Shown here in pieces: positions 3,001 to 35,500 of a stretch of 64,000 bases of DNA. The stretch comes from Zootoca vivipara (lineage: Eukaryota), in NCBI RefSeq assembly GCF_963506605.1, contig NC_083282.1:45198001-45262000 (forward strand). Direction: 5' to 3'. The position numbers were made by a program, and so were the translations under genes. The notes under the pieces are model-generated. The model worked only from the letters and a program-made list of their open reading frames with translations, was not told the origin of the DNA and made no database searches. Position 1 is the stretch's first letter; every line of letters begins with the position of its first letter.

Positions 3001-6000
3001 TTGGGAAACACTGCCCTATATAGTGGCAGCAAGGGCATCCCAATTGTTAGCCCCATCTGCAATGGTAGGTGCTTCTTCAGTGAAAGCCAACCTATTCCTA
3101 TTGCAATAGAGCAGGGAGCTAGGAAGGTTCTGCAATAGTTTCTTCCAAGGACAGCAGTGCCACATCCTCTGGCTGGAGAAACACTGCTCTCACAGGCTCA
3201 TCAGATAGAAGTACTTTTGGGGCTGGCCCTTCATTCCCTTTCCCTCCTGCTTCAGAGTCCTCAACCTCATCCCCTGAAGAAGGGGAATCTGACTCCAGGA
3301 TCATGACACCTTAAAGGGATGTTGGAAGTTTTAACGGTGTGCCTAAGAACCACCAGAGATGGTGCTTTTGAGTGACAATGCCCCTGTATGGCTTCAACTG
3401 GTTTTTGGGTTTTTTTGCAGTTGGTGTCACAGATGGAAGGACATATGCCCAGGACAGCAGAAGAGCTGCAGAAGCAGTTGCCAGGAGTTGGAAAGTACAC
3501 TGCAGGAGCTATTGCATCCATAGCGTTTGGTCAGGTAATGAGGTTGGGCAGATTTGCTTTAGGAATATGCACAAAGGAATATTACCCAATCTGGCTTTGG
3601 GATTTTGAGTCCTTAGTCAATCTAGAGGGCCAGACACTTCTTATCTCCTTTCCCTTTGCAGCTGATGTTCACTCTTGTGTTTCCGTTGATGCCCCTAAAA
3701 ACAGTGAATTGGCTACTGATTCCCTCACTGATAGAGCTAGAACAAGTAGGAACAAATAGGAAGATCTCAGCCAAGGAAGTGGTGTGTAATTTAGATTTCT
3801 GCTCTGTATGGCATGACTTCATAACCTGTGTAAATGAAAAGAAAGAGTATCAATACCTTTCTAACCCTGTGACTGGAAGAAAGACTAAATTGTGGCTAGT
3901 CTTGGTCATCAGTCCTGAAGAGTAGCTTCCTTTTGTACAATACAAACACAAACCATACAGAGGTGGTGTCTGGCAAGAGAAACAAATATTAATACAGAAT
4001 TTAATATGGTCTCTAGACATTACCGTACTATCTAAGCCACTAAATAATGACTTGTACCTCTGTGCACTCTGCTTCAAACCAAAGACTTCCTGAACCATAC
4101 TTGATATCCTAGCCACTACGTAATCTCAACTTTCCATGGATCCACAGAGTGAATTTGATGCAGCCAGAGGGCCCTCAGTGGCCTAGTTGGGCTCTTCAGT
4201 AGCTCTGTCAGCAGCCCTTAATGGAGGCTGGAGCAGAAGTTGTCGCAAGTACAGTAATGGTTGCGTTGCTGTTTTGTCCAATGCATCCAGGTGACCGGTG
4301 TGGTGGATGGGAATGTAATTCGGGTCTTGTGTCGTACACGAGCCATTGGTGCTGACCCTGCCAATGCATCTGTGGCTGACAGACTCTGGTAAGGGAAGGA
4401 ATGGGGTTGGGATGGTGCAACCATCAGCTTTAGGACCTGAGAGTCAGGAAAGGACAATAGCTTTTGGAAGATAAAAGTATTTTGTTCCTCCTTCCCCATC
4501 AGATATCCAAACTGGAGACAACACTTACTTGCAAAATCTAAACTGTTCACAGCCAGTCCCTAATTGCATATAGTGGACTTGCAGTTGGTCTCCCCATGCT
4601 GGTAGTGGCCCTACACACACATATGAATTTGAACTCTTAAGCTCAAAAACATAATGAATTAGCAGTTCAATCAGCAAACCAGGAGCTGTACACACACCCA
4701 GAGAAGTAGGGGTGAATAATGCAGTCCTTCACATGTAAGAAGGTTCCATTCAAATCAATGGGAATCCTAACTAAATGTTTGTTGGCTCAAGAGGAAGAGT
4801 TAGGTGCTGTGTAGAGAATGACAGAGGGCAGAGAATTTAGAAATGCTGCTCTTCCTCTTTTGGAAACTCCCCATTACTGATTGCTGAGCTTTTACAGAAT
4901 GCTGGTTTCTAGAGCCTGCTCTAAAGTTAGGGAGCAGGTAGCCTCCTCCCTAAGAAATGCTTCCCTACAGCGCAGAGCGACAGCTGGCAGCCCCAGGGCA
5001 GTTTTTGTGCAAAACTAGCACCTTTCTCTGTCTCTTTTTTTCACTGTCAGCTCTCTCCCATCGATGCGGTTGTAGATCAAGAAAGCTCTGGAGTTGTTTT
5101 CTTTCAAGCTGCTGCTTTAGAAAGACTTGTTATGCTTGCTAATGTAGGCTGCTGTCGTTCTTAGGGCTTTAGCACACACTCTGGTGGACCCATCCTATCC
5201 CGGTGACTTTAACCAAGCGATGATGGAATTGGGGGCAACTGTGTGCACTCCCAAGGCCCCACGGTGCATGGAGTGTCCCGTGAAGCAGCACTGCAGAGCA
5301 CGCCACAAAGTAAGGGAGCTCCTCCTTTATACCCTTTTCTGTTCCCCATGCTCTGGTGTTTTGCTGTGGAGTCAGATTATTATTATCTGTTGGGAAAGAA
5401 GAGCCATTTCCTGCAAAACTCCCTGAACAATTTAACACTCCTTGTACACATACCACACAGATATTGTATGGGGGTTCTGCATGTGTGTCTGCATGTCTGC
5501 TCAGAAGTACTTTGTTCAGTGGTGTTACTCCCTAGTGAGTGTGTTTAGGAATGCTGCCGTGCACATAAATTCCCTTGGAGTTCGTTCAATTTCATATGTT
5601 TGGATTTCCTCCTGAGCAGAAATACAGTCTAACAAAGCCACCTATTGATGCTTCATTATAATCTCTTCAGTTAATCATATTCTAAATTGTGGATCCTTCC
5701 TAGTTCCTTTCACATAACCAGGCCCACTTCATCTCTCTTCTTAAATTGTTCCATAGACAACACAGATGTGCATCCTATTCTGTCCTTGGGTTTGGTCTCA
5801 ACTTTGGAATCATCGCTAATGTTAAGACTAAGGACATGGGAGTTCTAGAAGAAGCCTCAAGTACTTGCACAGTCCCCCCACCTCTGTGTTCACTGATGGT
5901 TTCAACCTTTTCCTGCAGGTGGAGAAAGAGCAGGCAGCCTCTGCCAAGAAACTGTTAGGGAAACCTGCTTCTAAGTGCCCCCAGGTGCTGGATGTAGAAG

Positions 6001-13835: not shown

Positions 13836-15041
13836 TCAAACTTGCTGGTCCATATAGTTTTGTACAGACCGCCAGAGAGCACGAATGTTTCCCTCACCAA
13901 AACCTGTGGCCCCACATCGCTCTATAAGCTCCAGGAAGAAAGTATCTTCTGTAAAGAGAGGCTTGGTGAAGATCTGCATGAGGTATTGCTTCCCAAAAAG
14001 GCCTCCCGAGCCACTGTTGCCTCCTAAGTCAGTGTCCAGAAGGATGCCATGGTCCTTCAGGAGCTGAAGATTTTGCCCAGCTTGCCTTATCTCCTCCACC
14101 TTCCTTTTCTCACTGTAGTATGATAAGGGGGGCTTGAAAAAGTTTGCGCCAGATCTGGCCATGGCTGCAGCAGCCCCTATAATACCTGTGGTGTAGAGAG
14201 CCACGTGCTGGATGCCCGATCCACCGTGCTGTTCTAAGAAAGTATCCACCTGGTTCTTCTTTTGCTCTGGCAGAGACTCAGCTAGAATAATTTTACAGTC
14301 ATTGTGAAGCAGAGTTGAATCGCTCCCTTTGGACTGCATGGCAGTAAGACGAAGGCCCATACCAGCACCCTGGATTGTATAGCCATCAGTACCATTGTCT
14401 TGCTGGTGGATGGGGAAGCGCTGGAATCCCAAACAGTTCTTGTACCAGTCCAACACAGCTTGCGAGCTACCTTGGGGGCAAGCATAGGTGACATGGTCAA
14501 AATGTGTCACCTGGCCACCTGCCTGGAACTTCTTGGGAGCACCCTCTGCCATGTGGAAACCAGGCAGGAATGGTCCGCTGTACCGAGATCTGTCAAGTAG
14601 TGTGTGGCTGACGTTGCCTATGATGGATGCCACCACAGAATAAGTGACATGGCCATTTTCATCTCCCACAGCTGTGGGAGGGATGAGGATCTGACATCCT
14701 CGTTCCTGTAGGCTTTGGGAGATGCCAGGTACATCTTCTGCCTCAAAGCAAATGTTGGAGGCTGTACTGACGGCATACTCTAGGTCCACGTCATACAGGA
14801 TTCCTTTATCCTTGCGGCAGCCTGAAGATGGCACAGGCAGAGCGTCTCTCTTGGCAGGCTTCAGCCTTTCATTGACGAGAAAAACGGCATCGCCTCTCCG
14901 GAAGGCCAGCTGCCTGCTCCATTCTGCCACCCGTGCAGCAAACAGCTCGAATCCAAACTGGTGCACCAGGTTGCTGGCCAGCTGTTGCCCCTCAGGGACG
15001 TGGAACCCAATGTGGCACATCCGGTTCAGAAGACCAGGCAT
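13836..15041 (-). CDS. HPDL: 4-hydroxyphenylpyruvate dioxygenase-like protein, single coding exon, 401 aa from ATG 15041
   Basis: Uninterrupted ORF MPGLLNRMCHIGFHV...; VOC dioxygenase metal ligands FDHVTY, GIQHVAL, FLELIER and C-terminal GFGEGNIRALW; tail-to-tail with MUTYH as in other vertebrates. Confidence 0.96.
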   Translation of the reverse strand: MPGLLNRMCHIGFHVPEGQQLASNLVHQFGFELFAARVAEWSRQLAFRRGDAVFLVNERLKPAKRDALPVPSSGCRKDKGILYDVDLEYAVSTASNICFEAEDVPGISQSLQERGCQILIPPTAVGDENGHVTYSVVASIIGNVSHTLLDRSRYSGPFLPGFHMAEGAPKKFQAGGQVTHFDHVTYACPQGSSQAVLDWYKNCLGFQRFPIHQQDNGTDGYTIQGAGMGLRLTAMQSKGSDSTLLHNDCKIILAESLPEQKKNQVDTFLEQHGGSGIQHVALYTTGIIGAAAAMARSGANFFKPPLSYYSEKRKVEEIRQAGQNLQLLKDHGILLDTDLGGNSGSGGLFGKQYLMQIFTKPLFTEDTFFLELIERCGATGFGEGNIRALWRSVQNYMDQQV

Positions 15042-15130
15042 TGTGCTGTTTGAAAGGGTGGGCAATGGTAACACAGCTTTTGCTGCTAGACCTACAGAAA
15101 CAGAAAAGAAAGCCAGCTCAGTTGTTGTAG

Positions 15131-20744: not shown

Positions 20745-23359
20745 CCTGTAACAATTGCTTCCTTTTGCTTTATACCAAGGCGGCCCATCTCGTCACACCA
20801 ATAATGTATTCCTCAATGTAACTGAAAACTGCCAGGATGCAGTCATGTCATCTTCCAGAAGCATAATGCTTTCCAGTGTTCCTGGCCTGGCACTGCATGG
20901 TATTTCTTCAGTTCCTGAATGTGAAGTCTCTGAATGAAAAACAAGTACCGCTGGGTGTATGGCAGTGGTAAACGCAATTCATGCTGCTCTGAAATTATTC
21001 AAGGACATCTGTGTATCTATCCCCCAGCCAAGCACCTCCTCTCTCCCAGCCCCTTCTGGGTGGAGAGACCTTGAATGAGAGATAAAGTATGCCACAGCCA
21101 GCCTGGGGATAAGAGATCCGAGAGAACAGAGCTACAGTAGGACTGTCATAGAGTGGAGTAGAACAACAGCTGGAGTCACCTGAGAAAAGGCAAGAGTATC
21201 ACCTGGTTGGGAATTCTTGGCGCAGACTTGTTGGGAAGGCAGGTGTCAATGTCTATTAAGTTCAATTTCTGCAGTTTGTCAATATGCTTTGTGGAGGGGA
21301 GGCTCATGAGAAATATTTATCACAATGAAGTTAGAGCAGAAAGCTTCCGAACAAGGAAGGCAAAGTTGTGCTACTGCTTCCTAGAACAAAGTCTTGGTGG
21401 ATTCCTGAGAGGCACAACATTGGCAAGGTGTCAAATCACCTTTGATTGAACCACCTTTTGTGGGTGAGACTGTGAGAGGTTTTGAATCTTGCCAAGATAA
21501 GCATAATGAAGTTCTGCACCCTCATTATCTGATCTCTGAGTTGTTCCTAATCTACTACCACCACCCCAAGGCTGTTTTTCTTGGATGTGGGAAGGAGAGG
21601 AGTATATGGGAGGGAATTGCAGAAAGCCTGTGTGGTGGCAAGTAGGGGATGACGGGGACGTTGTGACCAGCTTTAGAATGCAAGTGCCACTGCTTCTGAT
21701 GGTGGACTCAAAAGCTTGTTCCACAGGACAATTAGGGGAGGGGAACATTCTGCCAAGATTTGGTTCAACCAAAGGCATTGCCTTCCCTGTTTTGCCGCTT
21801 TCTGGGATCAACAAGGGCTTTCTAAATAACCATTTTTATTGAGAGATTAGGGTGGTGTGGCTGAATCATGCTGGGATTGTGTGGCTTGTTTTTACAAGTT
21901 TAACAAGGCTTGGGTGTGTGTCCTTTTTTAACCAGTGTGTTGGAAAACAACAAGACTCTTGCTGAGATTTCATCCATGTGATTAATGTGTGTGGCTTACC
22001 AGGACTGTGCAAAACAGGCTGGCTCCCAGGGAGGAGCTTTCACCTGTTTTGTTCCTCCCCAGGCTTTTTAGCTCAGTTGGGTAGCTAAACCTCAATATGT
22101 AGCCAGTAACAAATCTTGGCTGTAGATAATTGTTAAGGAGGCAAGAGCTTCATCAGTATCCCAAGCTCAAACAACTCTCTAAGCCACCCTTGGCTTTGGT
22201 GCTGCACCCCACTGAGCTAAAGGGGCCACAGAGGAGCAGCTGTAATCTTATCCCCAGCAGCCAGTTCACACTAAACTATGGCTTTGCTTAGCATTAGATG
22301 TGAATGCAGCCAGAGCTGTAAAAAAATGTGGGGGAGAAACTAACGGTGCCTCCGGACTTCCACTATCTTGCAGAAGGAATGCAAGTACATGTTGGAAATT
22401 TAGATTTGCACAGTTAAAGCACATTAAAGGATTCTGGGCAACAAATTCACTTCACACAAAAACACCAGACTTTTTGCAGTTTGGAAAGTGATGGGGGAAT
22501 GCACTGAAAACATGTGCAATGAGCAAATGACTAATGGGAAGGCATATAAACACCCTGCAAGCAAATCTGAATGGATGCTAATTGTCATATAACTAACTAC
22601 CCTGCAAACAAATCAGAATGAATACTCAGCAAAGACTAGCTAAAATTTAACTTCTGTGTAAGCTTTGTGCAAGCAAATCAGGATGAATGTCAATAAACAG
22701 GGGGCTCAGTTTGTTGCGTAAGCTGCACATGAGAATTCTCTGCTCTGAGTTTGCTGACAACAGAGGAAGACAGTGCTTTTTTTCTCTTTGCTTTTTGAAC
22801 AGTTCTTAATTTTTAGCAAAACTTATACTGGAGCATTCATCTATGACAGGAAACATTCCATCACATCATCAGCCCTGCTTTGTATTTATAAATGTATAGG
22901 GAAAGGAAAACTGCAGTTGTTTAGTAACAAGTGAAAAACATATGATCAGATGCACAGTATTCCTAAATTCTAAGTGCAGGGAGGAAGTGGAAGCTGCAGC
23001 TGTTAAGCAGCATGGGGAATTACTTTATTAATTTATTAATGTTTAACTATTTGTGCATTCTCTCCCATGGTTATCTGACTCATATAGGGCCAGTCAATTA
23101 TTGCTGTGCCCCACTTGTAAAATGGGGCCAATATCCTCTAAAAGCAATAGGGTGCCTATATGTGACTTACGTACGTGAATTGCCTTGTGGCCTGTGGCTT
23201 ACTTCATTGCTTTTGTCCTGTCTAGATATTTGCTTGCATTCATTTTTAGTTCCCACTTTCTTCTTGAGGCATGTTTCAGTCCAGATTGTGTTGGCTTCAC
23301 CATTGTCTGCCAGACCAGACTGCTTGGCTGCCAGACTCCTTCTTTGGCCCTATCTGCTC

Positions 23360-23900
23360 CTCAAATTATGGTGGAACAACACAATACTAGGCATACTCAG
23401 TGCTTCCCCCAGGGGGGTACTCAAGGGTACGCAGTACCAGCACCTCTTTTTGTTGTTGTTAAAAAGTGTGGCACTTACTGTAACAGCTTCATGGTACCAG
23501 CACCTATTTTTCTAGAAAAAAAAGCACTGAGTATACTGTGTACCATTCTGGTCACCTCACCTAAAAATATATTCTGTAGAGTTGGAAAAGTTTCAGAAAA
23601 GGCCGGAGCAATTAAAATGATCAAAGGGCTGGTACAACCGTCTTATGAGGAAATATTACAACATTTGGGGATTTCCAGATGAGAAAAAAAGGTGTATGGC
23701 ATAGAGAACGTGGATGGAGAGAAGTTGTTCTCTGTCTTTCCAGAATATTAGGCCATCCAATGAAGCTGAAAATGGGAAAATTCAGGGCGGACAAAAAGAA
23801 GTACTATATAAGTACTTGCTCTCACAGGATGTGGAGATAGCCATTAATTTGGAGGTGTATGGGAAATGCACCTGGAAAACAAAATATATTAAGGAGTTAG
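23360..23900 (+). mobile_element. Degenerate CR1 LINE ORF2 3' fragment, interrupted by a MITE
   Basis: TACTGTGTACCATTCTGGTCACCTCACCT...TTGGAAAAGTTTCAGAAAAGG...AAAATGATCAAAGGGCTGG resembles the CR1 YCVQFWSP..LEKVQ..TKMIKGL region. Confidence 0.65.
23398..23529. mobile_element. hAT-type MITE
   Basis: CAGTGCTT...AAGCACTG ends with an imperfect 8-bp TSD GGCATACT/AGTATACT. Confidence 0.75.
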
Positions 23901-24168
23901 TGATCTGACACAGTTAGCCTTCCTGCCTCTGTTCCTTCCCCCTCCCTTGCTCTTGTTAAGTTTTTTGATGCTGTGAGAACAGTCTTTAATGTCCTGAGAA
24001 CTTTGGGAGGAGGTGAAGCCCTACACACAGCTGCCTTCATCAGTTGTGGAGGATAATTCTAGGTACCTTATTTGATGCTGGACATTGTTTTGACAAACTG
24101 AGGCCTTGGGAGGGGGTGGCTAATGGATGATCTGCACATAGCCAGCCTTGGAAGCCACACAGGCTATC

Positions 24169-24175
24169 TATAAAA
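24169..24175 (+). promoter_or_regulatory. Candidate TATA box for SELENOP2
   Basis: TATAAAA about 760 bp upstream of the acceptor (24928-24929) of the ATG-containing exon; that acceptor implies a non-coding first exon upstream. Confidence 0.4.
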
Positions 24176-24434
24176 TCGGATGCTTTGGGCAGAGTTTCTT
24201 TGAAGCTCGTGCACAGATTGATCGGCCACAGGGCCGTGCAAACTGAGGCTACCTGGGGGAGTCGCTTTGCCGCTTCTTGAGGGCTTCCAAGTGGCAGATT
24301 GAAGTGCTTGCTTGGTATATGTATACCTTGCTTGCTGTTTCAGAATAAAATCTTTAAACTTCTCACTCACTTGTGCATTTTGTACTGCTTCTGAATCTCA
24401 TTTTAAAAGAACCACCACCTTGCCGTTGGCAAGA

Positions 24435-24655
24435 CAGGAGGATTAGACAAATTCATGGAGGACAGGGCTATTCATAACCACTAGATATGATGGATACCTC
24501 CACTGTCTGAGAAGCTTCTGCTTACCAGTCAATGGGAATCACAAATAGAGGGAGTGCTGTGGCACTAGGCATCTGGATGGCCACTGTGAGAACAGGATGC
24601 TGGACTAGATGAGTCTTTGGTCTGATCCAGCAGGAGGTCTCTTCATATGTTCTTA
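24435..24655 (+). mobile_element. CR1 LINE 3' end
   Basis: GGATTAGACAAATTCATGGAGGA...GGCCACTGTGAGAACAGGATGCTGGACTAGATG...TGGTCTGATCCAGCAGG...TATGTTCTTA. Confidence 0.7.
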
Positions 24656-24949
24656 ATGACCATGCTGGGAGTTGTACTGCAACAATATCCAGAGAGCCAC
24701 AGGGCAGCAACAACTCTTGCTGTAGCTGTAGCTGAAATCCTGGGCAGCTGATATGTGAGCGTGTCTTTAAGCATCCATTACTGTCACTTTCAAATACAGG
24801 GCACTAGGGCATCCATGTAGGACAATCTTACCTATGTTTACTCAGAAGAAAGTCTTCTGAGACTTGGAGGCTGCATCTGGCCTGCTGAGGGAAGTTCTTA
24901 TGGTCTTAAGCTGCTCTCTTCTACTTTAGGCTGAAGGGAGGTGGCCAGG

Positions 24950-27900
24950 ATGGGCTATTCAGCCCTAGCCACAACAACCTTGCTGCTGCTCCTGGCAATT
25001 GCTGCTACGCTGGCAGACGTGGCTGAGAACAGGACCCGAATATGCCAGCCTGCACCACTCTGGAAGATCAATGGAGTGGCCCCCATGGCTGGGATGGAGG
25101 GCCAAGTGACAGTGGTGGCACTGTTGAAAGCCAGCTGACAGTTCTGTCTCAAGCAGGCCGCCAGGTGAGTTCATAGTTCATAGATTGCCTGAGTCAGGGG
25201 CTGTTAGGTCGCAGCCACACCATACATTTGGTGCACGTGGCTTTCCCCAAAGAGTCATGGGAACCGTAGTTTAAGAGTGCTGGGAACTGTAGTTCTGTGA
25301 GGGGGTAAATCGCAGTTCCCATAATTCTTTGGGGAAAGTCACACGCTTTAAAAAGATGGCCTGGGTGTGACTAGAAAGTCAGATATGTGTTGGAACCCTG
25401 TATCTGGTTTTCAGCGGCAATATCACAACTCTTAAGGTCACATATTTGCCCCCAGGCTTTCTACCAGGAAACACAGAAAGGAACCGGTTGTCTATAAGCT
25501 CCAGTTCAACAATCAAAAATTGAGGCCTGGGCTGCAGCAGGCCAGATATAACATGCATATAGAAGGTGGCTGCAATTTTCCTGGTGAATTACAGCTCAAG
25601 CATAATATGTATCATTTAACTTATTGCTGGATCTATGTAGCAGGGACTGCTGCAATGGCAAGTCCAGTGAACTGATCAATGAAGGGGCCTCTGTCCAGCA
25701 GTGCAGGCTCATATCCCACATGGTATGTGCAGAGGGCAAAGGCTGGAACCTATATCTGTGCACTGCATTTCCTAAACGTTGCTTGTTCTTCCTCCCCATC
25801 AGCCTTGGCAGCTTGCAGAGGAAGCTGTCCCTTGAAGGAGTGACCAATGTCAGCTTCATGATTGTGAATGAGAAGACTCCTTTCTCCAGAGCTATGTACT
25901 GGGAGCTCAAACGGCATGCCCCAGAGGGAGTTCCTGTTTACCAGCAGCAGATTCTGGAGCCTGACGTCTGGCAAATTCTAGATGGGGACAAGGATGACTT
26001 TCTGATCTATGACAGGTCAGTGCTTAAGGGAGCAATTCTAACTCCCCAGCCACCCAGTCTGATGGGGTTTTTGGAGAGTCAGGGCCACTGCTGTGCATAG
26101 CAGCTGGGGCAGAAGGGAGGGAAGGCAGATCACTGAGCCAGCTTGGCTTGGAGCTGGTGTAGCAATTGAGCCTGGAACAAGCCCAGTTCTGGCAGTGGGA
26201 CCATCTCAGGATCCAATGGACTGCAGTCCGGCTCAATCCAGCTCCTTCCTTGACTGCTGAAAGCCCCTGCTGCCACCAGCAGGGATCCCATCAGCAGCGC
26301 TGGGGGGCAGAAGAGGGTGCTCCGTAGGCAGCTGATGATGGGAGACCAATGGGGGTCTGCAGGCCTGGGCAGAAGGAAGGAAAGTAAGATATATGGAATC
26401 CGGGATTCCTGAATGTGTTATCAAAAAGTCTGTTTGAGAACACATCTGGAAAGAAAGGACATACCATGATGTAAGTGTTTCTCTTTACCATCATGCCTCA
26501 CAACTGTTGGTGAGGAAAACCAGATTCTTCAGGCCAGGTTAGATTCATTTCTAGTGCAAATTAGTGGACTACAGGCTCTACTGACACTAAATTTATGTCC
26601 GTTTGTTTCATGGCTCTTGGGCTTTACAGGTGCAGCAGGCTGGCTTTCCACATCCAGCTGCCATACAGCTTTCTGCACTTGCCCTATGTTGAAGCAGCCG
26701 TGCGGTACACACACAGCAAAGACTACTGCGGCAATTGTTCCTGGTACCCCTCTAACAGCAGCCAGGAGGTAGGGACTTGAATCCCCTCATCAACTTCCTT
26801 TTCAACTATTTTGTTTAAGCCAGACGTTTCCTCATTTGCCCATCCTGAACTTTTGCCTGGGAATTCTAGGTTTCTGATCAGATCGGCCTTACAGCAGGAA
26901 TGTGGGAGGAGAAGGTGGAAGGGAGTGTTATATTCTACAGTATTGGGCCACTACAGCAAGCAAGGAGAAAGGATGTTGAGATACCACAAAGCATCTTTCA
27001 TCTTGGCAGGAAGTAAACCATCTTGAAATAAAAATCTCAGAAGCAAATTGCAGAGGGGGACATCAGGTCTGCCACAGTCACAGATAGTGTAGCGTGGAGG
27101 GGTCCAGGTTGGGGGGAATGCTAAACTCCCCCCCCCCCACTTGCAGCTTCTCACATATACACATCTTTATGCCCTCCCCCAAGTGCTTTTCTCCCCAGCT
27201 GAGTTCAGATACTAAAAGTGAGATTAACTTGGAGAAAAACACTTTGGAACAAAAGTTGTGTGGCATCAAGTGCAGGAAAGGTTTGGTTCCCCTCACCCAG
27301 GCACCCCTTTTGCTCTAAAGTCAACCCCACCTTCCTGTTTTATACATGGTGGGGCAAGACCTGGGTCTGCTGCCATCATGTACTGCTTGAAGCTCACCCA
27401 GTAGCCATTGTCTGCCCTCAGTTCTAGATAAAAATGAAATTAATAGCCTTAATTTGTCAGGTTGAAGTGTGTCAGGTTGAAGTGGGAGCATATTGTTCCT
27501 TGGATAGAAGAAATAGTAACTGCTGTCTTGTCCTGTGGTGTCACTTCCTGCTGCATCAGTAACCTGAAAGTTCATTCCTCAAGGTGGGACTGATGTATTG
27601 CCGATTTTAGATTTTTGCTGCCCTGATAGCCAATGCAGCAAAATATTGTAAATACGTTTTAAGCCATTTCGGCCATACCGAGAGTAAAGTCAAACAGATC
27701 TCCTTCCAGCAGTGGGTGCAGATTTTTCAGATCTGGAGAAATAAATCCTTCTTCCCTCCCCACTCTTTTGAGATATATATACCGTATATTCCAGCGTATA
27801 AGGCGACTGGGCGTATAAGACGGCCCCCCACTTTTCAAGTTAAAATATAGAGTTTGGGACATACTCTATATTTTATGTACTTGCAGCCGCGGACAAGCCC

Positions 27901-28866
27901 CAGCTGACTCTCTGGCAAGCCAACAGCTCGTGAGCAACAGCACCGGCAAAGCTGCTCCTCTCCCTCCTCCCTGGCTCGCTGTCAAACCTCGCAGCTCCAC
28001 AGAAGCGATTTCTGGCGCTGCAGACATGTTGGATATGGGCAGCACAGAATCAGAAATCGCTTCTGCGCAGCTGCGGACGCGATTCTGGTGCCACTCGGCG
28101 AGTCCCCGCGCCGGTTTAGCGCAGCGCGCAGGGGACTTGCTGAGCGGGCAGCTCAGTTCACGGACCAGCGGGGCAGTACCTGGCGTATAAGACTTTGGAG
28201 GAGATTTTTGGGGGTTAGAAAGTCATCTTATACGCTGGAATATACGGTATACTTGGCTTAAACTCCTGTGCAGCTTTTTGCCTCTCAAACTTTGGGCTTT
28301 TAAAAAACCATTTCTACGCCTATACATCCAGCATGTTTGCTCATTTAAACTTCTATTTTACACATTCTTTAAAACCACTTTTTAAATGGCAATCACCATT
28401 CTTCACAGCCAATTTCTCCTGAAAACAGAAAGTAGAAGTTGCTCTGAGCTCAGTTTATTTTAGAAGTTTACATATTTTGTCAAAAAGGGCTGAATGCAGA
28501 TCAATTCAGATATATATATATCCACCTTCATTTTCAAAAATATGTTTCTGTCTTCACCCTAAGCCCTTCTGTATGTACATGTACATATACTAGAATCTTT
28601 CATTACCTTCACAGATGAATAAGACAGCAAGTACTAACGTGACGACAACTGAGGGATCTGGGCACAAAGAGAAGCACCTGGAGGAACCAAAGTACCATCA
28701 CGATGAGCCAAGCCAAGAAGCACCTAGCACCAAGCCCACAGCCCATCACTATTCACATCATGGAGGAGTCGGCAACCATAAAGCCTTGGGTTTGAGTAGT
28801 ACACACCAGCCAGTTCTCCACTCTCAGAATCGCTCACAGAAGCATCAAACAAGGGAATCCCCATAA
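24950..28866 (+). CDS. SELENOP2: Selenoprotein Pb (SELENOP2), 272 aa, one in-frame UGA-Sec
   Basis: Exons 24950-25164, 25803-26015, 26630-26768 and 28615-28866, all GT-AG and in frame (819 nt). Signal peptide, GQVTVVALLKAS-U(TGA 25136-25138)-QFC, DVWQILDGDKDDFLIYDRC, LPYSFL..PYVEAA, YCGNCS, His-rich tail, no Sec-rich C-terminal domain, SECIS in the 3'UTR. Confidence 0.93.
27782..28247. mobile_element. Tc1/mariner-pogo non-autonomous element in the last SELENOP2 intron
   Basis: Perfect 21-bp TIR CCGTATATTCCAGCGTATAAG flanked by TA duplications; CpG-rich interior. Confidence 0.9.
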
Positions 28867-29353
28867 AAGATTTAAACTTCAGTGTATGCAACACCCAACA
28901 GTTAGCCATAAGCACACTCAGCACTAAGCAAGCTTTTAAGAAGAACTTACATGCATCAGAAGGAAGAAGTATGATGGTTCAGTTTTCAGCAGGGGAAGGG
29001 AAGTGACTGTTCCACTCCCTAAATTAACACAAACGTTCAAGGTCTCTCAACTGATAGCAGAGGGCACAACACAAACTTTTGTTGTGTCATATATGTGATT
29101 GGAAAGTTTAACTGCTTGTCCACAATGAGACCTCTATCCTCATTTTTAATCTGTCTCCCAATTAACCTCATACCCACCAGTTTTGTTCCACCAAGCCTTA
29201 AGGTGGTGTTCATCTTGGGCTCAGATTTTTGGATACATCACATTTCTGTGATGGACTGCCTAAGGAAGCCATCTTGTTTTCCTCAGGAACACAGAGCTGC
29301 TATGGTACTCAGCTTCTTGGGAAGCCAATTTTGACCCCCTTTTTGCATTTCCT

Positions 29354-29424
29354 GCTTTTGTGCACTCAATGAAGCACGTGATGTAAACTTTCTGTCATCA
29401 CATGCTGACACCGTACATAAAAGC
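29354..29424 (+). promoter_or_regulatory. SECIS element (type I) in the SELENOP2 3'UTR
   Basis: Helix I GCUUUUGUGCAC/GUACAUAAAAGC; AUGAA at 29369-29373; helix II GCACGUGAUG/CAUCACAUGC (9/10 pairs); apical AAA 29385-29387, 11 nt above the core; 3' UGAC 29406-29409. Confidence 0.9.
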
Positions 29425-29860
29425 ATGTCCTTGGAGATGGAAGGATGGGGATCAGAACTGGTATTAGCAGGAGGGTGACGTGACTGAGGCTGACTTTGAG
29501 CCTGGGGCTCAAGATTTTGTACATTAAAGTCCATGCCCACAAATTACTAGTTTGAAAACTGACATTTGTTGTGTTGCTGGATCTTACTCAGCTATGAGTG
29601 ATCGCCAAAGAAGAAGAAGAAGGATGTAAAGAACATTTGGTGTTTGTAGGAATGGAAGTGATGAGACAGAATTAGCCAGGTTTACAGGTATGTTGATAGA
29701 TGTAAGAAAGACAGAGAAGTCTGAGGTGAGAGTTGAGTTTGTCAGTGCTATGAGAGCTGAACAAGGGGGGGAAATGCCATGTATCAGGAAAATTCATGGA
29801 AAGGGATGCACTGCTTGCTGATTAAAAGTAGTAAAACTGTTTTTGGGGAAGAATGTTGGA

Positions 29861-29866
29861 AATAAA
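29861..29866 (+). terminator. Candidate SELENOP2 polyadenylation signal
   Basis: AATAAA downstream of the SECIS; ATTAAA variants at 29523 and 29821. Confidence 0.45.
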
Positions 29867-32454
29867 CTCTCTGAAATGAGCATGTTTGAAGTCTTTGCTT
29901 AATACCTTAATGTACAAATGGGGTCATTTATTTCAGACAGTACCCAGCATTGTAGAACAAGTGTTCACCTTCAACATTTAAGAGATGCCCCATAGTTTAT
30001 CTGCATTTATGGCATACTAAGCAGTCCTTATTTAGGTTCCGGTTCCTGTTATTTGTTGAAAGTCAATGAGTTGGTTCACACTGTACAAGTCCTCCACATC
30101 CCACAGTTTTAGGAAGCTACTGCTACAAATATTTACGGGAGGGTGTAATCTGTCTTCTTTATTGTATTGTTAATGCTGATAGGTATCCACCTATAATCTG
30201 TTTACTCCAAAGTAACCCTAGTTAGTAAAGCCGACTAGACTGCAATAGGTGGCAGTTTTTCATAGGTTTATGCCATTTCTTTGAAAGCCTCAATTCATTT
30301 TTTTTACATTTCTGCTGGCGGCTAAAGGGACCAATCTTAAATTTACAGGACCAGCCATAGGTATAACATCTATAATAGGTAGCTCAAAATTATAACTCTG
30401 CTGATTACACTCACACATGCTGTAGACTGGAGTGAGTAACTTATTTCAGCCCAAGGGCCACATTTGCTTCTGGGTAACCTTCTGAGGGCCGCCTGCCAGT
30501 GGTGCACAGGGACAGAGGTCAAAGTGAATGAAGCAACAATAGTTAATTTTACCTTTCGTACCAGTAGGCTAGTTTCTTCATACTCACACATTCCTCTCTA
30601 TTCACCCAGGCAAGCAAAGAAGCATGATCAGAATTCAACGACGCAGTCCAGCCACTCAAAAAGAGGGTGTGAAGCAGTGACGTGGCCTGGGGAGAGCCTC
30701 AAGGGACAGATAATGAGTTCTGGAGGGCCTGAGGTTCCCTATCCTTGTTCTGTTCTATAGGATACATTTATCATCATATAATTTCATGCCTGCCCAGGGT
30801 GTGTGCCTTTATGTGTTAGCTTGTTAAAGAAACAGTAACAATACACACACATAGAGAGACAATACCTTAAAGGTTTGGGGAAATAAAACAGCTCTTCTTC
30901 TGGCCCCAGATATTAATAAGGCTTGCTGCTGGTGTCAGGCAAGCTTTTCTAGGAAAGACAGGGCAGTATAACTGGAAAGACCCGACCACAGTCCCTGAAA
31001 GTGGGGAGATCTGAAGAAGGGCCTCCTGGTATAATATTAGTAGTTCAGGAGGTTCTTGTGGAATAAGGCAACCTTTGAAATTCTGCAAGATGTGGTGATA
31101 GCTACCAACTTAGAAAGCTATAAAAGGGCATTAGGCTGTCAGTGAGGTGCTTATAGTTAACAACCCACCTTTGGTGTAAACAGCATACTTAACTGCAGAT
31201 TGATTTATCCCCTTGTGTATATCAAAACTTTCCTGATATCTGTACATGCTGGCCACTCTTAACATACATGCATTAGAGCTATAACATAATTTATAGCTTT
31301 TGGTAATATGTCATATAATTAATCGTCTTCACCCAGGGCATAACCAGCACAATGGACTCTAAATAAAATGCTTGCAACTGTGATTCAACTTGCAGGCATA
31401 GTTGCTTAACAACTAGTTTAATGTTCTTAGCAATCTTGTTCTCCACAATACATAACATAGTAACAAACAAAAGCAATATCCCCACCCCACCGTGTAGCCC
31501 GTATGGTAGCAGCTATGACCTGGTGTAATATTTGATTACTTGCCCAACTGACATGCAAAGATTTAGCTGTCCTTCCCACATGCTGTTCCTTTCCCTTTTT
31601 ATGTTCCTTTAGTTCATTTCCTACTTATGTACATACCTAGCTGAAACCATCCCTGCCCCTCCAGAAATCTGCAGAGGCCCAATCTACAACAGCTAGGTCA
31701 TAATTTAATTGTTAAGAGACTATTTTCTTGCTGATAGTTTTGTACCAACCAAAGTAATTATATGGCTGGCTTGTTGTTGATTTTTAACATTCCAATTGTA
31801 TTTATAATCTATTCCTTTTATTTCTATGTACAGTATTACCATTATTACCAAATAAAAAACCTTCAGTAGTACCAGTGCTAAAAAAAGATGGGGCAAAATG
31901 TTTTGCTTAGGACAACAACATTCCTACCTAATGCTGGCCTTGGGCTCTGATCCAGCTTTCCTGATGCCCTCTGCCCCAGCCCACAGCTCCCATTATCCAA
32001 ACTAAACTCCTTTGCGTCATGTCCTGTTTGCTTACATTTGCAGCAGAGTCCACAGGTTCACAGCAAAACTGGAGCAAGACTTTTATTATCATGTTTGATG
32101 CTAATCTCATCTAACATGCAGGGCAAATATTTGCTAAAGATCCTCTTTAAACTGGCCTCTCTGTTTGCAGCAGCCAGAAAATCTCTTATAGTTTGCCTGT
32201 GTATATGCCTACTCAGAATAAAGCCTCATTTGAGTTCTATGGCACTTACTGCCAAGTATGTGGGTATAGCATTGCAGATGTAGTCTCTTTTTGATGGACA
32301 AGGCTGGCAGAGTGAAGCAACCACCACAGGTGGTAGATGCTAAGGGGATAAAATGGAGGCAAGATGTTGGAAGAGAGAACTGCCTATGCCACACACAGCC
32401 TCCCCTGCTGCCCTCAGGCATGGTAGAGGATGCAGTCCCATTGCAAATGGAGAA

Positions 32455-32597
32455 AGGAGATGTCTGAAGGCTGCCCTGCATAGGGAAGTTTTGTAATGTT
32501 TAATTATGTTTTTATATATGTTGGAAGCAGCCCAGAGAGGCTGGGGCAACCCAGTCAGATGGGTGGGGTGCAAATAATAATTTTTTTATTATTATTA
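32455..32597 (+). mobile_element. L2-like LINE 3' end
   Basis: Reverse-complement homolog of 9490-9650 with an AAT/TTA tail. Confidence 0.65.
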
Positions 32598-35500
32598 CAT
32601 GTATTTTGCCTTGGTACTAAATTGCATTAGGGTTTTGTTTGACTACATGATTACAGAATCAAATCAAATAGACGCTCAGTTAAAGGAGCCTTAACATTTA
32701 GGGTAGAGTTGGTAGAACAGCAAAGTCTTTCCCATAGTTTTTTTTATTGTCAAAGCTCTCCAGAGGGAAGCAGTAACAATATTATTGATGTTAACATCTT
32801 CCCCTCCAATATTTTTTCTCCATGGATGAGCTCCAATATTAGAAGTGACTTTGACTGGATGGGAAGCATTTTGGCACGGAACTACGGAAAAATAAGTACT
32901 GAGTGGAAGGAGGGTTCGGATCCCCTTACCCTTCTGATTCTTTGCCTTAACACAAGTCTACAGGGTGGGTAGTGTAGCACACAGACAGAGGAGTGATAAA
33001 ATTTGCTAGGCTACATTCTGTGAGGAACAGCCCTCCTTCCTTCCTCCCTCCCTTCATGTAAGCTCTATTTACAATTCCCCCTGCATTTGCACCCATAAGC
33101 TTGTCTCTTACTTGACTAGCACCAAGGACCATGAGGTTGTGTAAACATCTGTACAGCTGCCTTATCTTCTGCTTAACACTGTCATTTGCTCTAGAGTCCC
33201 TTTAACCCTGTTCATCTGAGGGATCAGCTAGAGAATGAAAAGCAGAATGGTGTGTGTGAGAGAGAGAGATGAGAAGGGAAGGAGAGGCTGTGTCCATGTC
33301 TATTTCTCCATGGAATTCACACTATGGGCTGCCTTCAGGAGATGTAGTACTTCTGTTGGAAGCCTCAAAAGTGGGACAGCATTAGACTTTAATCAGCAAA
33401 GGAGGGGGCAGCTGAGGGGTAAATATGCTTTAATGCCTCTTAAGTACACTTTCTCTGCCCAATCCACTTTCCCCTGTTGGGCAGTGAAGTAAAAAGAAAC
33501 AAAAGGTTATCTAGCGAATTCAGAAGGGTTATGTTAACTGGCTTCATTATTCAATTAATTCATGCATGAATGTATAAGACTGACAGAAACAAGAGGAAAA
33601 TGTCTAATGGTGCTGTAGAAACTCATTTATAGAAAATGGTCTGGCACATTTAAAGTTTACACATGTAGAGTAATTGCTTCCATTGTAATGTTATGTTCAT
33701 ACAATATTCAGGAGTATTTACATAAGTGATACATAATAAAATCCAACATGCTAATAAGTTTCTAAAACTTATTTAAGAGTCATTCCCTATAGATAGGCCA
33801 TGATTGGTTATTCTTTAAGTTTGCAATCTTATACATACTGATTAGAGTGTAAAATCTTACATGCACACTGAAATCACTAGGATTTTCTTCTGGATATGAA
33901 TGCATAGGATTGTGCTTTGAATCTTTCACCATCTGTTGTATAAGCAAGAGTCCTCATATGTAATTCCCAAGTATAAAACTCATTTATCAAATAATTCATT
34001 CAAAGCAGTATGCTTCTGGTTTACAATGATATTCATTTTATGAGGAGCTCAGAAAAGTTTAAGACATTATTTCAAACCATCATTTTAAACAATATCCCCG
34101 AAGTTTGGGGATGCCTGTCTTAGAGCCATCCAAAGAAGCAGGGCAAGGGGGATAAAGTGAAGGGACTGCCTCAGAAGAAGGCACCTTGAATTAACCAGCA
34201 GTCTGCTAGTAATCCTTACTGTATTAATCCACTTGACGTTATCAATTTAAAAGAGGATCCCAGCTATAGGATGTATTTGAGTATCACCATAATTGATGCT
34301 CTGCAATCTTAGATGATCAAGCCTTTTAGTTTAGTGCCTTGTGGGGACATTTCCTAATGTTAGGAGGCAGTGCCACATTGTGGGTTCTGTCAGTTAGTGC
34401 AGCAAGTACTGTTTCCCGCTTTCTTAGGAAACCCCCTAAATTGCAGGATGTTCAACCTGAATGGATTCTCAAGATCAAGCACTTTTGGCAGCTCTTTTGT
34501 ATTCTAATGCTTGGACAGGTACTGGAAGTTTAAGATGCTATTTGATCAATTTATATATCGTATTTACTCCTTTCATATTTCTGGGAAGTGGGTTGATCCT
34601 CCAATTTACTGAGCGCAGGTGTGAAACATGTCATCTTGATCCACCTGAGTCTGGCTTCGTGTTTCAGGACCTAGTCAGCAGTAGTGGTCCTGATGGATGA
34701 CCTTGATCACATGAGACGCAGGAGGGTGTGACCCTGCAGCTCACTCTTTTTTTGACAACAATCATGGTACCCACCTGGACCAGCCGTCTTGGGTGGAGAT
34801 TTGTGGAACTGTACTTCACTGGTTCCGTTCCTTTCTGCAGGACCTTTCAGAGAATGACTCTGGAGGACTAGAAATCCCTGGCATTTCTACTAGTGGGTCT
34901 CTCATGGTACCTTCACATCCCCAATGCTTCTAAACATCTACCAGGTTACCTGAATGGCCACCTTATCCCTTATAAACCAGCCAGATCATTGCACTCATCT
35001 GAAGAAGCCCTCCTGACACAGATGTAGTTTCTACAAGAACCAAAGTTTAGCGTAGCAGCACAGGTGCTCTGGAACAGCGTTTCAGACATACCACTTTTGA
35101 TAATTTGTCACCGATAAAAGTTGCTTTCTCCAGTCATTTTTAGATTATTAGTTTGATTCCTTGTTGGTAATTTGATTTGTATTTTATGTTGTTTTATTGT
35201 ACTGTATATACTGCCATGATTTTTTTCTATGGCTTGGCAGTTCATACTCTTAGAATCAGAAAATAAATAATGTGGAGAAATTACAGATCTGCGTAAGTAC
35301 ACAAAATGTTGTGAGAGGGAGAGGACCATATCAGAGCCAGTACTGATAGGAGGGCAATTAGGACTATGCAAGGAGTAAGATCAATGGATGATTTTGGGCT
35401 TGCGGTTCAGGTTTTGGATAGTGAAGGTCTGTAAGTCATGAGTTATTAGACTGAAGGCTGAAGCATCTGTTTGGCAACATGGTTAACTAAGTCTATGCAG

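What the first reader, a model, noticed from the sequence alone, without database searches (positions are those of the whole stretch)
24950..28866. Hidden selenoprotein: SELENOP2/SelPb read through an in-frame UGA
Seen: the ORF track stops at TGA 25136-25138, but the frame continues as QFCLKQAA to a strong donor (AG|GTGAGT). It splices in frame through three more exons to give a 272-aa protein with a signal peptide, a UxxC motif and a His-rich tail. Known: SELENOP-family N-terminal domains carry UxxC, and SelPb lacks the multi-Sec transport tail and is absent from placental mammals. Inference: a functional single-Sec secreted redox protein that automated pipelines can truncate or call a pseudogene.
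Basis: partly seen in the sequence, partly recalled or inferred. Interest (0 to 1): 0.8.

Follow-up and report, generated by a model that had tools for sequence, protein, structure and literature searches.

The report
Lizard selenoprotein Pb (SELENOP2) gene

Summary
ATG 24950, an in-frame TGA at 25136-25138 and four coding exons give 272 codons plus a stop. Pfam SelP_N matches exons 1-3 colinearly, with the gap at the TGA. RNA contigs and reads from three studies show all three junctions. One 999-nt contig spans every coding exon with the TGA unchanged.

A SECIS hairpin lies at 29353-29425, 503 nt past the stop. It is the only match in 128 kb to my simple SECIS descriptor. It is transcribed, and a natural variant (29377 C>T) repairs its one helix mismatch.

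The closest named proteins are reptile "selenoprotein Pb". Sharks carry Cys at the TGA position, and turtle and cobra models keep QFCLKQA after it. Neighbours are an HPD-like gene and MUTYH.

New details:
- An upstream non-coding exon (about 21165-21238) is joined through a GC-AG intron.
- Expressed alleles have G at 28615 (Val rather than Met).

None of 60 public models of 87-276 aa carries U. The Podarcis muralis model splices around the UGA.

This is a known gene family, so interest is low. One thing is unexplained: in one run, read orientation over the 3'UTR is opposite to that over the exons. The scan's own note s1-852678 had already flagged the SECIS.

The parts
21165..21238 (+). Non-coding first exon (5'UTR). 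The 5' limit is approximate; the 3' end sits at a GC donor (AAG|GCAGGT).
   Evidence: The X5 and X1 contigs carry 74-75 letters upstream of 24928. Their last 18 letters match 21219-21236 with one mismatch, against 0.02 matches expected by chance. Only the split 21238|24930 gives a legal intron, GC..AG.
24930..25164 (+). First coding exon. It has a 20-nt 5'UTR, the ATG at 24950 with A at -3 and G at +4, a signal-peptide-like N-terminus, and the start of the SelP_N domain.
   Evidence: Translation. Pfam SelP_N, E 5.1e-09, profile positions 2-36. Covered by RNA contigs X1 and X5.
25136..25138 (+). In-frame TGA, the proposed Sec codon 63, in the motif U-Q-F-C.
   Evidence: It is unchanged in the X5 mRNA contig, whose only difference in this exon is the synonymous 25012 G>A. 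The aligned position is Cys in shark SelPb-like proteins, and it is deleted or skipped in turtle and cobra models that keep QFCLKQA.
25803..26015 (+). Second coding exon, the core of the SelP_N domain.
   Evidence: Pfam SelP_N, E 1.7e-24, profile 47-116. Junctions on both sides are seen in RNA. It is 100% identical to the P. muralis model and 81-90% identical to other reptile SelPb models.
26630..26768 (+). Third coding exon, the Cys-containing end of SelP_N (CGNCS).
   Evidence: Pfam SelP_N, E 1.3e-14, profile 118-161. Junctions seen.
28615..28866 (+). Coding part of the last exon. It encodes a His/Ser/Thr-rich tail with N-glycosylation sequons and ends at TAA 28864-28866. It contains no further TGA.
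   Evidence: No Pfam family, so no SelP_C. The tail and its end align with squamate SelPb models that end at the same place, for example P0017 at 92.8%. Further stops follow in frame.
28867..29900 (+). 3'UTR. The 3' end is approximate. AATAAA lies at 29861 and ATTAAA at 29821.
   Evidence: RNA contigs cover 28971-29620 and 29596-29929 in X1 and 29591-29860 in X5. X19 reads cover 28924-29803. Poly(A) signals come.
29353..29425 (+). SECIS element. AUGA is at 29369-29372, helix II at 29373-29383 paired with 29396-29406, AAA at 29385-29387, GA at 29407-29408, and helix I at 29353-29365 paired with 29413-29425.
   Evidence: Fold of -23.6 kcal/mol, z -3.55. It is the only match to a SECIS descriptor in 128 kb, with 0.1 expected. 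Rfam SECIS_1 aligns end to end at 16.2 bits, which is below its gathering score of 35. It is transcribed. The variant 29377 C>T makes helix II perfect.

Best explanation
The window carries the SELENOP2 (selenoprotein Pb) gene of a wall lizard. It is Podarcis muralis or a very close relative, judged by 100% identity to that species' public model. The gene has five exons. The first is non-coding, and the other four encode a 272-residue secreted glycoprotein. This protein has a signal peptide, a thioredoxin-like SelP_N domain whose redox centre is U-Q-F-C, a short Cys-containing segment, and a moderately His-rich tail without further Sec. UGA codon 63 is recoded to selenocysteine by the single SECIS hairpin, which lies about 1.13 kb downstream on the mRNA, through the standard eukaryotic machinery (SBP2, eEFSec, Sec-tRNA). 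What is shown here: the exon structure, the splicing, transcription of coding exons and SECIS, family membership, and conservation at and around the UGA. What is inferred: secretion, the redox function of UxxC, heparin or membrane binding by the tail, and actual Sec insertion.
For: - Frame and splice sites.
- SelP_N matches in three exons are colinear on the profile (2-36, 47-116, 118-161), and the only gap lies at the UGA and the eight residues after it.
- All three coding junctions, and a 999-nt contig spanning all coding exons with the TGA intact, appear in RNA-type runs from three studies.
- Variants in the domain exons are all synonymous (3 of 3), whereas 4 of 6 in the tail change the residue. 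P. lilfordi shows 0 differences in the 116 residues of the second and third coding exons that its model covers, against 6 of 83 in the tail. This is purifying selection on the domain downstream of the UGA.
- The SECIS is a unique descriptor hit, has a stable fold, is transcribed and keeps its structure in three haplotypes, one of which repairs the mismatch.
- Orthologues: reptile proteins named selenoprotein Pb are 81-90% identical in the second coding exon. Sharks have KASCRFCL, a turtle model KAS-QFCLKQA and a cobra model QFCLKQAAS.
- This matches the literature. SelPb has a single Sec, is Cys in frogs and sharks, and was lost in placentals (PMC2397514, PMC3316567, bioRxiv 10.1101/2025.05.29.656587).
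- The neighbours are an HPD-like single-exon gene and MUTYH. From my own knowledge, both lie on human chromosome 1p34. PMC6301783 reports that the conserved SelPb locus maps to human chromosome 1 and lacks the gene there.
Against: - Rfam's SECIS_1 model scores only 16.2 bits against a gathering score of 35, and it found nothing in the wider scans.
- The spliced contigs end at 28944-28956 and the next contig starts at 28971, so no single record links the coding region to the SECIS.
- In run X19, read pairs over the exons and over the 3'UTR have opposite first-mate orientation. This could mean a separate antisense RNA over the SECIS region.
- SELENOP1 proteins were outside the length range of the protein search, so placement against that paralogue rests on architecture, names and synteny, not on a tree.
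- No translation data are available.
Confidence: 0.92

Rival explanations
1. The gene is a decaying or non-functional copy. The UGA simply terminates translation after 62 residues, and the downstream frame is a relic.
For: Public gene models avoid or truncate at the UGA. Rfam does not call the SECIS at its threshold.
Against: All four exons keep the frame with canonical splice sites. The mRNA is spliced as predicted. Variants downstream of the UGA in the domain are synonymous only. The residues after the UGA are identical in cobra and turtle. A unique, structurally conserved SECIS sits in the 3'UTR.
Confidence: 0.03
2. It is a SELENOP1 (SelPa) paralogue that lost its Sec-rich tail in this lineage, and not the SELENOP2 orthologue.
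For: SELENOP1 proteins could not appear in the protein search because of its length range, so no direct comparison was made.
Against: The best named matches across reptiles, fish and sharks are all SelPb or SELENOP2, and they share the same short tail and the same stop position. No SelP_C domain is present. Only one SECIS is found. The neighbours are the HPD-like gene and MUTYH, which fits the chromosome-1-type SelPb locus of PMC6301783 and not the SELENOP1 locus.
Confidence: 0.02
3. In addition to the selenoprotein mRNA, a second RNA is made from the opposite strand over 28977-29803, covering the SECIS. Alternatively, a short SECIS-less isoform ends near 28950.
For: In X19, first-mate orientation is 38:1 minus over the 3'UTR but about 12:2 plus over the last coding exon. 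Spliced contigs from two runs end at 28944-28956.
Against: - In X20, from the same study, exon and 3'UTR reads share one orientation.
- Minus-class reads in X19 run from the coding exons into the 3'UTR and include spliced reads.
- Contig depths of the coding and 3'UTR parts track each other in X1 (5.1, 8.0, 6.2) and X5 (29.8, 42.9).
- No poly(A) signal lies between 28867 and 29522.
- No minus-strand gene was recognised downstream.
Confidence: 0.12

Closest known systems
SELENOP2 / SELENOPB / SelPb (sepp1b) of fish, sauropsids, monotremes and marsupials
   Same: It shares the SelP_N thioredoxin-like domain with UxxC, a single Sec, a His-containing tail without a Sec-rich region, and one SECIS. 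It has the same exon plan, with a non-coding first exon and a large last exon that carries the tail and the 3'UTR. It is 81-90% identical in the core exon to reptile proteins named selenoprotein Pb (PMC2397514; PMC3316567).
   Different: Nothing of substance differs. The tail diverges fast even within Podarcis (6 of 83 residues). The 5'UTR intron uses a GC donor. The public models for this genus lack the Sec.
SELENOP / SELENOP1 / SelPa (plasma selenium-transport protein)
   Same: It has the same N-terminal domain family, the same UxxC position and a signal peptide. The exon boundaries are comparable (Pfam SelP_N; PMC2397514).
   Different: SELENOP1 has a Sec-rich C-terminal domain (7-28 Sec, per PMC2397514). 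From my own knowledge it has two SECIS elements and lies at another locus. Here there is one Sec, no SelP_C and one SECIS.
Cys-form SelPb of frogs and sharks
   Same: It is the same protein with the same motif position (KASCRFCL in Heterodontus and Scyliorhinus).
   Different: Those lineages replaced Sec by Cys (PMC2397514; bioRxiv 10.1101/2025.05.29.656587). The lizard keeps TGA.

Membership tests
Selenoprotein P family (Pfam SelP_N) | N-terminal SelP_N (thioredoxin-like) domain | tested here: met
   Three exons match PF04592 above its cut-off, colinearly on the profile (E 5e-09, 2e-24, 1e-14).
Selenoprotein P family (Pfam SelP_N) | In-frame UGA in a UxxC motif at the start of the domain | tested here: met
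   TGA 25136-25138 is followed by Q-F-C. It falls exactly in the profile gap 37-46.
Selenoprotein P family (Pfam SelP_N) | SECIS element in the 3'UTR, by motif and structure | tested here: met
   AUGA, an 11-bp helix II, AAA, GA and helix I lie at 29353-29425. It is the only descriptor hit in 128 kb, with 0.1 expected. It is transcribed.
Selenoprotein P family (Pfam SelP_N) | SECIS recognised by a curated covariance model | tested here: inconclusive
   Rfam SECIS_1 aligns over its full length at the same place, but at 16.2 bits against a gathering score of 35. The wider scans found nothing. SECISearch3 is not available here.
Selenoprotein P family (Pfam SelP_N) | Signal peptide (secreted protein) | not testable with these tools
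   No signal-peptide predictor is available. A hydrophobic run, LLLLLAIAATLA, follows a short N-terminus.
SELENOP2 / SelPb subfamily | Single Sec; no Sec-rich C-terminal domain | tested here: met
   The frame holds no other TGA. TAA at 28864 is followed by more stops. There is no SelP_C match. The stop position is shared with squamate SelPb models.
SELENOP2 / SelPb subfamily | Sec or Cys at the same position in orthologues | tested here: met
   Sharks have Cys. Turtle and cobra models skip one codon but keep both flanks.
SELENOP2 / SelPb subfamily | Groups with SELENOP2 and not SELENOP1 in a phylogeny | not tested
All named matches are SelPb or SELENOP2.
SELENOP2 / SelPb subfamily | Conserved SelPb locus (the block that lacks the gene on human chromosome 1) | tested here: inconclusive
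   An HPD-like single-exon gene and a MUTYH exon lie 10-21 kb upstream. That both are on human 1p34 is my own knowledge. PMC6301783 names the chromosome only, and its figure is not held.
SELENOP2 / SelPb subfamily | Sec actually inserted at the UGA | not testable with these tools
   This needs Ribo-seq, 75Se labelling or mass spectrometry.

The most novel reading that the evidence does not exclude
An RNA from the opposite strand overlaps the SECIS-bearing 3'UTR of SELENOP2 (28977-29803). It could modulate Sec decoding or mRNA stability. This would parallel, as I recall it, the CCDC152/L-IST antisense RNA that restrains SELENOP translation in mammals. The only support is the orientation flip of read pairs in one run.
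Probability: 0.1. Interest if true: 0.45.

Novelty: already known. Interest (0 to 1): 0.15.

Why it matters
The biology is textbook for the selenoprotein field. SELENOP2 is known from fish to marsupials, and recent surveys cover hundreds of vertebrate genomes. The practical value is in annotation. None of the 60 public protein models of 87-276 aa that the search found for this gene contains Sec. The model for this lizard both skips the redox centre and loses the last exon. The window gives a fully supported gene model: five exons, a GC-AG first intron, a Sec codon, a SECIS and a poly(A) signal. It could correct those records.

Tried and rejected
- Rfam at gathering threshold over the whole window, and at E<=10 over 28800-33000, found no SECIS. 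Only a 141-nt scan brought out the sub-threshold SECIS_1 match.
- A loose IUPAC pattern for SECIS was uninformative: 242 hits against 284 expected. I replaced it with a pairing-aware descriptor.
- tblastn of the exon peptides against the window found no second SelP copy.
- PDB holds no sequence relative of the core exon.
Orthologous DNA and transcript contigs that could have shown TGA and SECIS conservation in other squamates were therefore not read.
- The spliced protein was never joined. Each exon was translated and searched by reference on its own, and the piece before the TGA and the piece after it were kept apart.
- For the one large word search, I used the stop-free ORF 25624-26097 that contains the core exon, and only residues 61-130 were scored.
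- The representative search over 1.84 billion proteins was left out because the family scans had settled the family.
- No structure was predicted.
Full report
**What is in the sequence**

- The ATG at 24950 has A at -3 and G at +4. It opens a frame that meets TGA at 25136-25138 and then continues as QFCLKQAA to the donor CAG|GTGAGT after 25164.
- Exons 25803-26015, 26630-26768 and 28615-28866 keep the frame, in phases 2, 2 and 0. They end at TAA 28864-28866.
- The four pieces sum to 819 nt, which is 272 codons plus the stop.
- All three introns are GT..AG with good polypyrimidine tracts.
- The tail has 12 His in 83 residues.
- After the TAA, the same frame meets TAA and TAG within 40 nt. No hidden Sec-rich extension follows.

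I never joined the exons into one protein. Each was handled by reference on its own, and the stretches before and after the TGA were kept apart.

**Family**

Pfam SelP_N (PF04592) matches the piece before the TGA at profile positions 2-36, the next exon at 47-116 and the third at 118-161. All three are above the curated cut-off. The only missing profile positions are the Sec codon, the eight residues after it and a split codon. The last exon matches no family, so there is no SelP_C domain.

**Expression and splicing**

I laid four runs on 24700-29950: two sets of RNA-type contigs (X1, X5) and two raw RNA-seq runs (X19, X20), from three studies.
- Junction 25164|25803 is seen in X1, X5 and X19. 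The tool's 25161|25800 with "cut +3" is the same joint.
- Junction 26015|26630 is seen in all four runs, from nine distinct starts in X19.
- The third junction has exactly the predicted 1846-nt skip, but it was laid as 26769|28616. This means the reads carry G where the window has A at the first base of the last exon. With the canonical acceptor, this is an A/G difference at 28615 (Met in the window, Val in the expressed alleles). The P. lilfordi protein model also reads SSQE-V-NKTAS there.
- One X5 contig of 999 nt runs through all four coding exons. Its only difference in the first coding exon is 25012 G>A, so the TGA is present in the mRNA.

**An extra exon**

Both contigs carry 74-75 letters upstream of 24928 that are not contiguous in the genome. 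Their last 18 letters match 21219-21236 with one mismatch, against 0.02 matches expected by chance. Given the four-letter overlap, the only legal split is 21238|24930, with a GC donor (AAG|GCAGGT) and an AG acceptor. The gene therefore has five exons, the first non-coding. This matches the SelP gene plan in PMC2397514.

**SECIS**

Rfam called nothing at its thresholds.

By eye, and then by folding, 29353-29425 forms a SECIS-type hairpin. AUGA lies at 29369-29372 in an internal loop. An 11-position helix II has one C·A mismatch. AAA sits in the apical loop, 12 nt after the AUGA. GA lies at 29407-29408, and there is a long helix I. The energy is -23.6 kcal/mol, z = -3.55.

A pairing-aware descriptor finds this site and no other on either strand of the window. 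The descriptor requires:
- A/G-UGA;
- at least 9 pairs in helix II, with at most one mismatch;
- AA at the right distance;
- GA on the 3' side;
- a helix I of at least 5 pairs.

Block shuffles give 0.1 hits per 128 kb.

In a 141-nt scan, Rfam SECIS_1 aligns over its full length at the same place, with AUGA, AAA and UGA in register. The score is only 16.2 bits against a gathering score of 35.

The site is transcribed: it is covered by X1 contig 28971-29620 and by 13-18 X19 reads at each variant position in it.

The expressed haplotypes carry 29377 C>T. This turns the C·A mismatch into U·A, giving a perfect 11-bp helix II. Two further changes fall in helix I and in the internal loop. The architecture and all core motifs are kept.

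The UGA-to-SECIS distance on the mRNA is about 1.13 kb.

**Relatives**

I made one word search using the stop-free ORF 25624-26097, scored only over the core exon. It returned 60 proteins.
- The best is a Podarcis muralis UniRef entry, 100% identical over the core exon. It is also 100% identical to the first 59 residues and to the third coding exon. The window therefore comes from that species or a very close relative.
- Other reptile hits are 76-90% identical where they cover the whole core exon, and several are named selenoprotein Pb (alligator, king cobra, geckos, turtles).
- Fish and shark hits named selenoprotein Pb or P2 are 61-69% identical.

None of the 60 sequences contains U or X.
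- The P. muralis model jumps from VVALL to GSLQ, removing K-A-S-U-QFCLKQAA-S, and it runs into the intron after the third coding exon.
- The P. lilfordi model starts at the Met in the next exon.
- The Pelodiscus model reads KAS-QFCLKQAHS with the codon removed.
- The cobra model keeps QFCLKQAAS.
- The two shark proteins read KASCRFCLTQATK.

So the aligned position is Cys where it is not a stop, and both flanks are conserved. This is what the literature reports: a single Sec in SelPb, Cys in frogs (PMC2397514) and sharks (bioRxiv 10.1101/2025.05.29.656587), and loss in placentals (PMC3316567).

The tail aligns with the tails of squamate models, which end at the same residue.

**Selection**

The three variants seen in the domain exons are all synonymous. 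In the tail, four of six change the residue. P. lilfordi differs at 0 of the 116 residues of the second and third coding exons that its model covers, and at 6 of 83 in the tail. The part downstream of the UGA is under purifying selection, which argues against a 62-residue product.

**Locus**

Upstream lie two genes.
- A single-exon ORF on the minus strand (13836-15074) is related to 4-hydroxyphenylpyruvate dioxygenase (E 1e-33). This fits HPDL, the name a first-stage note used.
- A plus-strand exon is from adenine DNA glycosylase MUTYH (E 5e-13).

From my own knowledge, both are neighbours on human 1p34. PMC6301783 reports that the conserved SelPb locus corresponds to a human chromosome 1 block that lacks the gene. 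The window holds no second SelP copy.

**Mechanism**

- Shown: a spliced, polyadenylation-competent mRNA with one UGA and one SECIS, encoding a SelP_N protein.
- Inferred from the family (PMC2397514): a secreted glycoprotein whose thioredoxin-like domain uses a selenenylsulfide-forming UxxC centre, and a His-containing tail for heparin or membrane binding.
- Inferred from general selenoprotein biology: UGA 63 lies far upstream of the last exon junction, so the mRNA should be sensitive to nonsense-mediated decay when selenium is scarce.

**Unexplained**

- In X19, pairs over the coding exons mostly have the first mate on plus (12:2 at 28702). Pairs over 28977-29803 have it on minus (38:1 at 29551). 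Both classes contain spliced reads of the same haplotype.
- In X20, from the same study, the few exon and 3'UTR reads share the minus class.
- The spliced contigs of X1 and X5 stop at 28956 and 28944, and the next X1 contig starts at 28971. No single record links the coding region to the SECIS.
- Contig depths track each other (X1 5.1, 8.0, 6.2; X5 29.8, 42.9), which favours one transcript.
- An antisense RNA or a short isoform is not excluded.

**Verdict**

The observation and the interpretation are both right. The gene is the known SELENOP2/SelPb, so novelty and interest are low. The useful output is a corrected gene model for a locus that public protein sets mis-model.

Noticed in passing
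window 27767-28262: Intron 3 of the gene holds an element of about 500 nt. It has 42-nt terminal inverted repeats (27767-27808 and 28221-28262, 83% complementary) and an inner 25-nt hairpin (27990-28014 and 28051-28075). RNA-contig depth there is 231 in X1 and 212 in X5, so it looks like a multi-copy, transcribed MITE-like repeat.
   Followed up: partly
window 28924-29803: In run X19, read pairs over the 3'UTR have the opposite first-mate orientation to those over the coding exons (38:1 against about 2:12). In X20 both parts share one orientation. This could be an antisense RNA or a library quirk.
   Followed up: partly
window 21239-24929: The 5'UTR intron of the gene uses a GC donor (AAG|GCAGGT) with a normal AG acceptor. 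This is the only legal split consistent with the RNA contigs.
   Followed up: yes
window 29598-29612: An (AAG)n microsatellite in the 3'UTR has an AAG insertion polymorphism at 29607. Many reads from elsewhere pile up on it.
   Followed up: no
window 13836-15074 (-) and 3388-3759 (+): Two neighbouring genes were seen. One is a single-exon 4-hydroxyphenylpyruvate-dioxygenase-like ORF (probably HPDL). The other is an exon of the adenine DNA glycosylase MUTYH with its helix-hairpin-helix motif.
   Followed up: partly
window 28615: The window has A (Met) at the first base of the last exon. All RNA runs that cover the junction have G (Val), as does the P. lilfordi protein model.
   Followed up: partly
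window 32346-32413 (+): A weak, sub-threshold Rfam match to the mir-31 precursor (22.6 bits against a gathering score of 51, E 0.11) lies downstream of the gene. It is probably chance.
   Followed up: no
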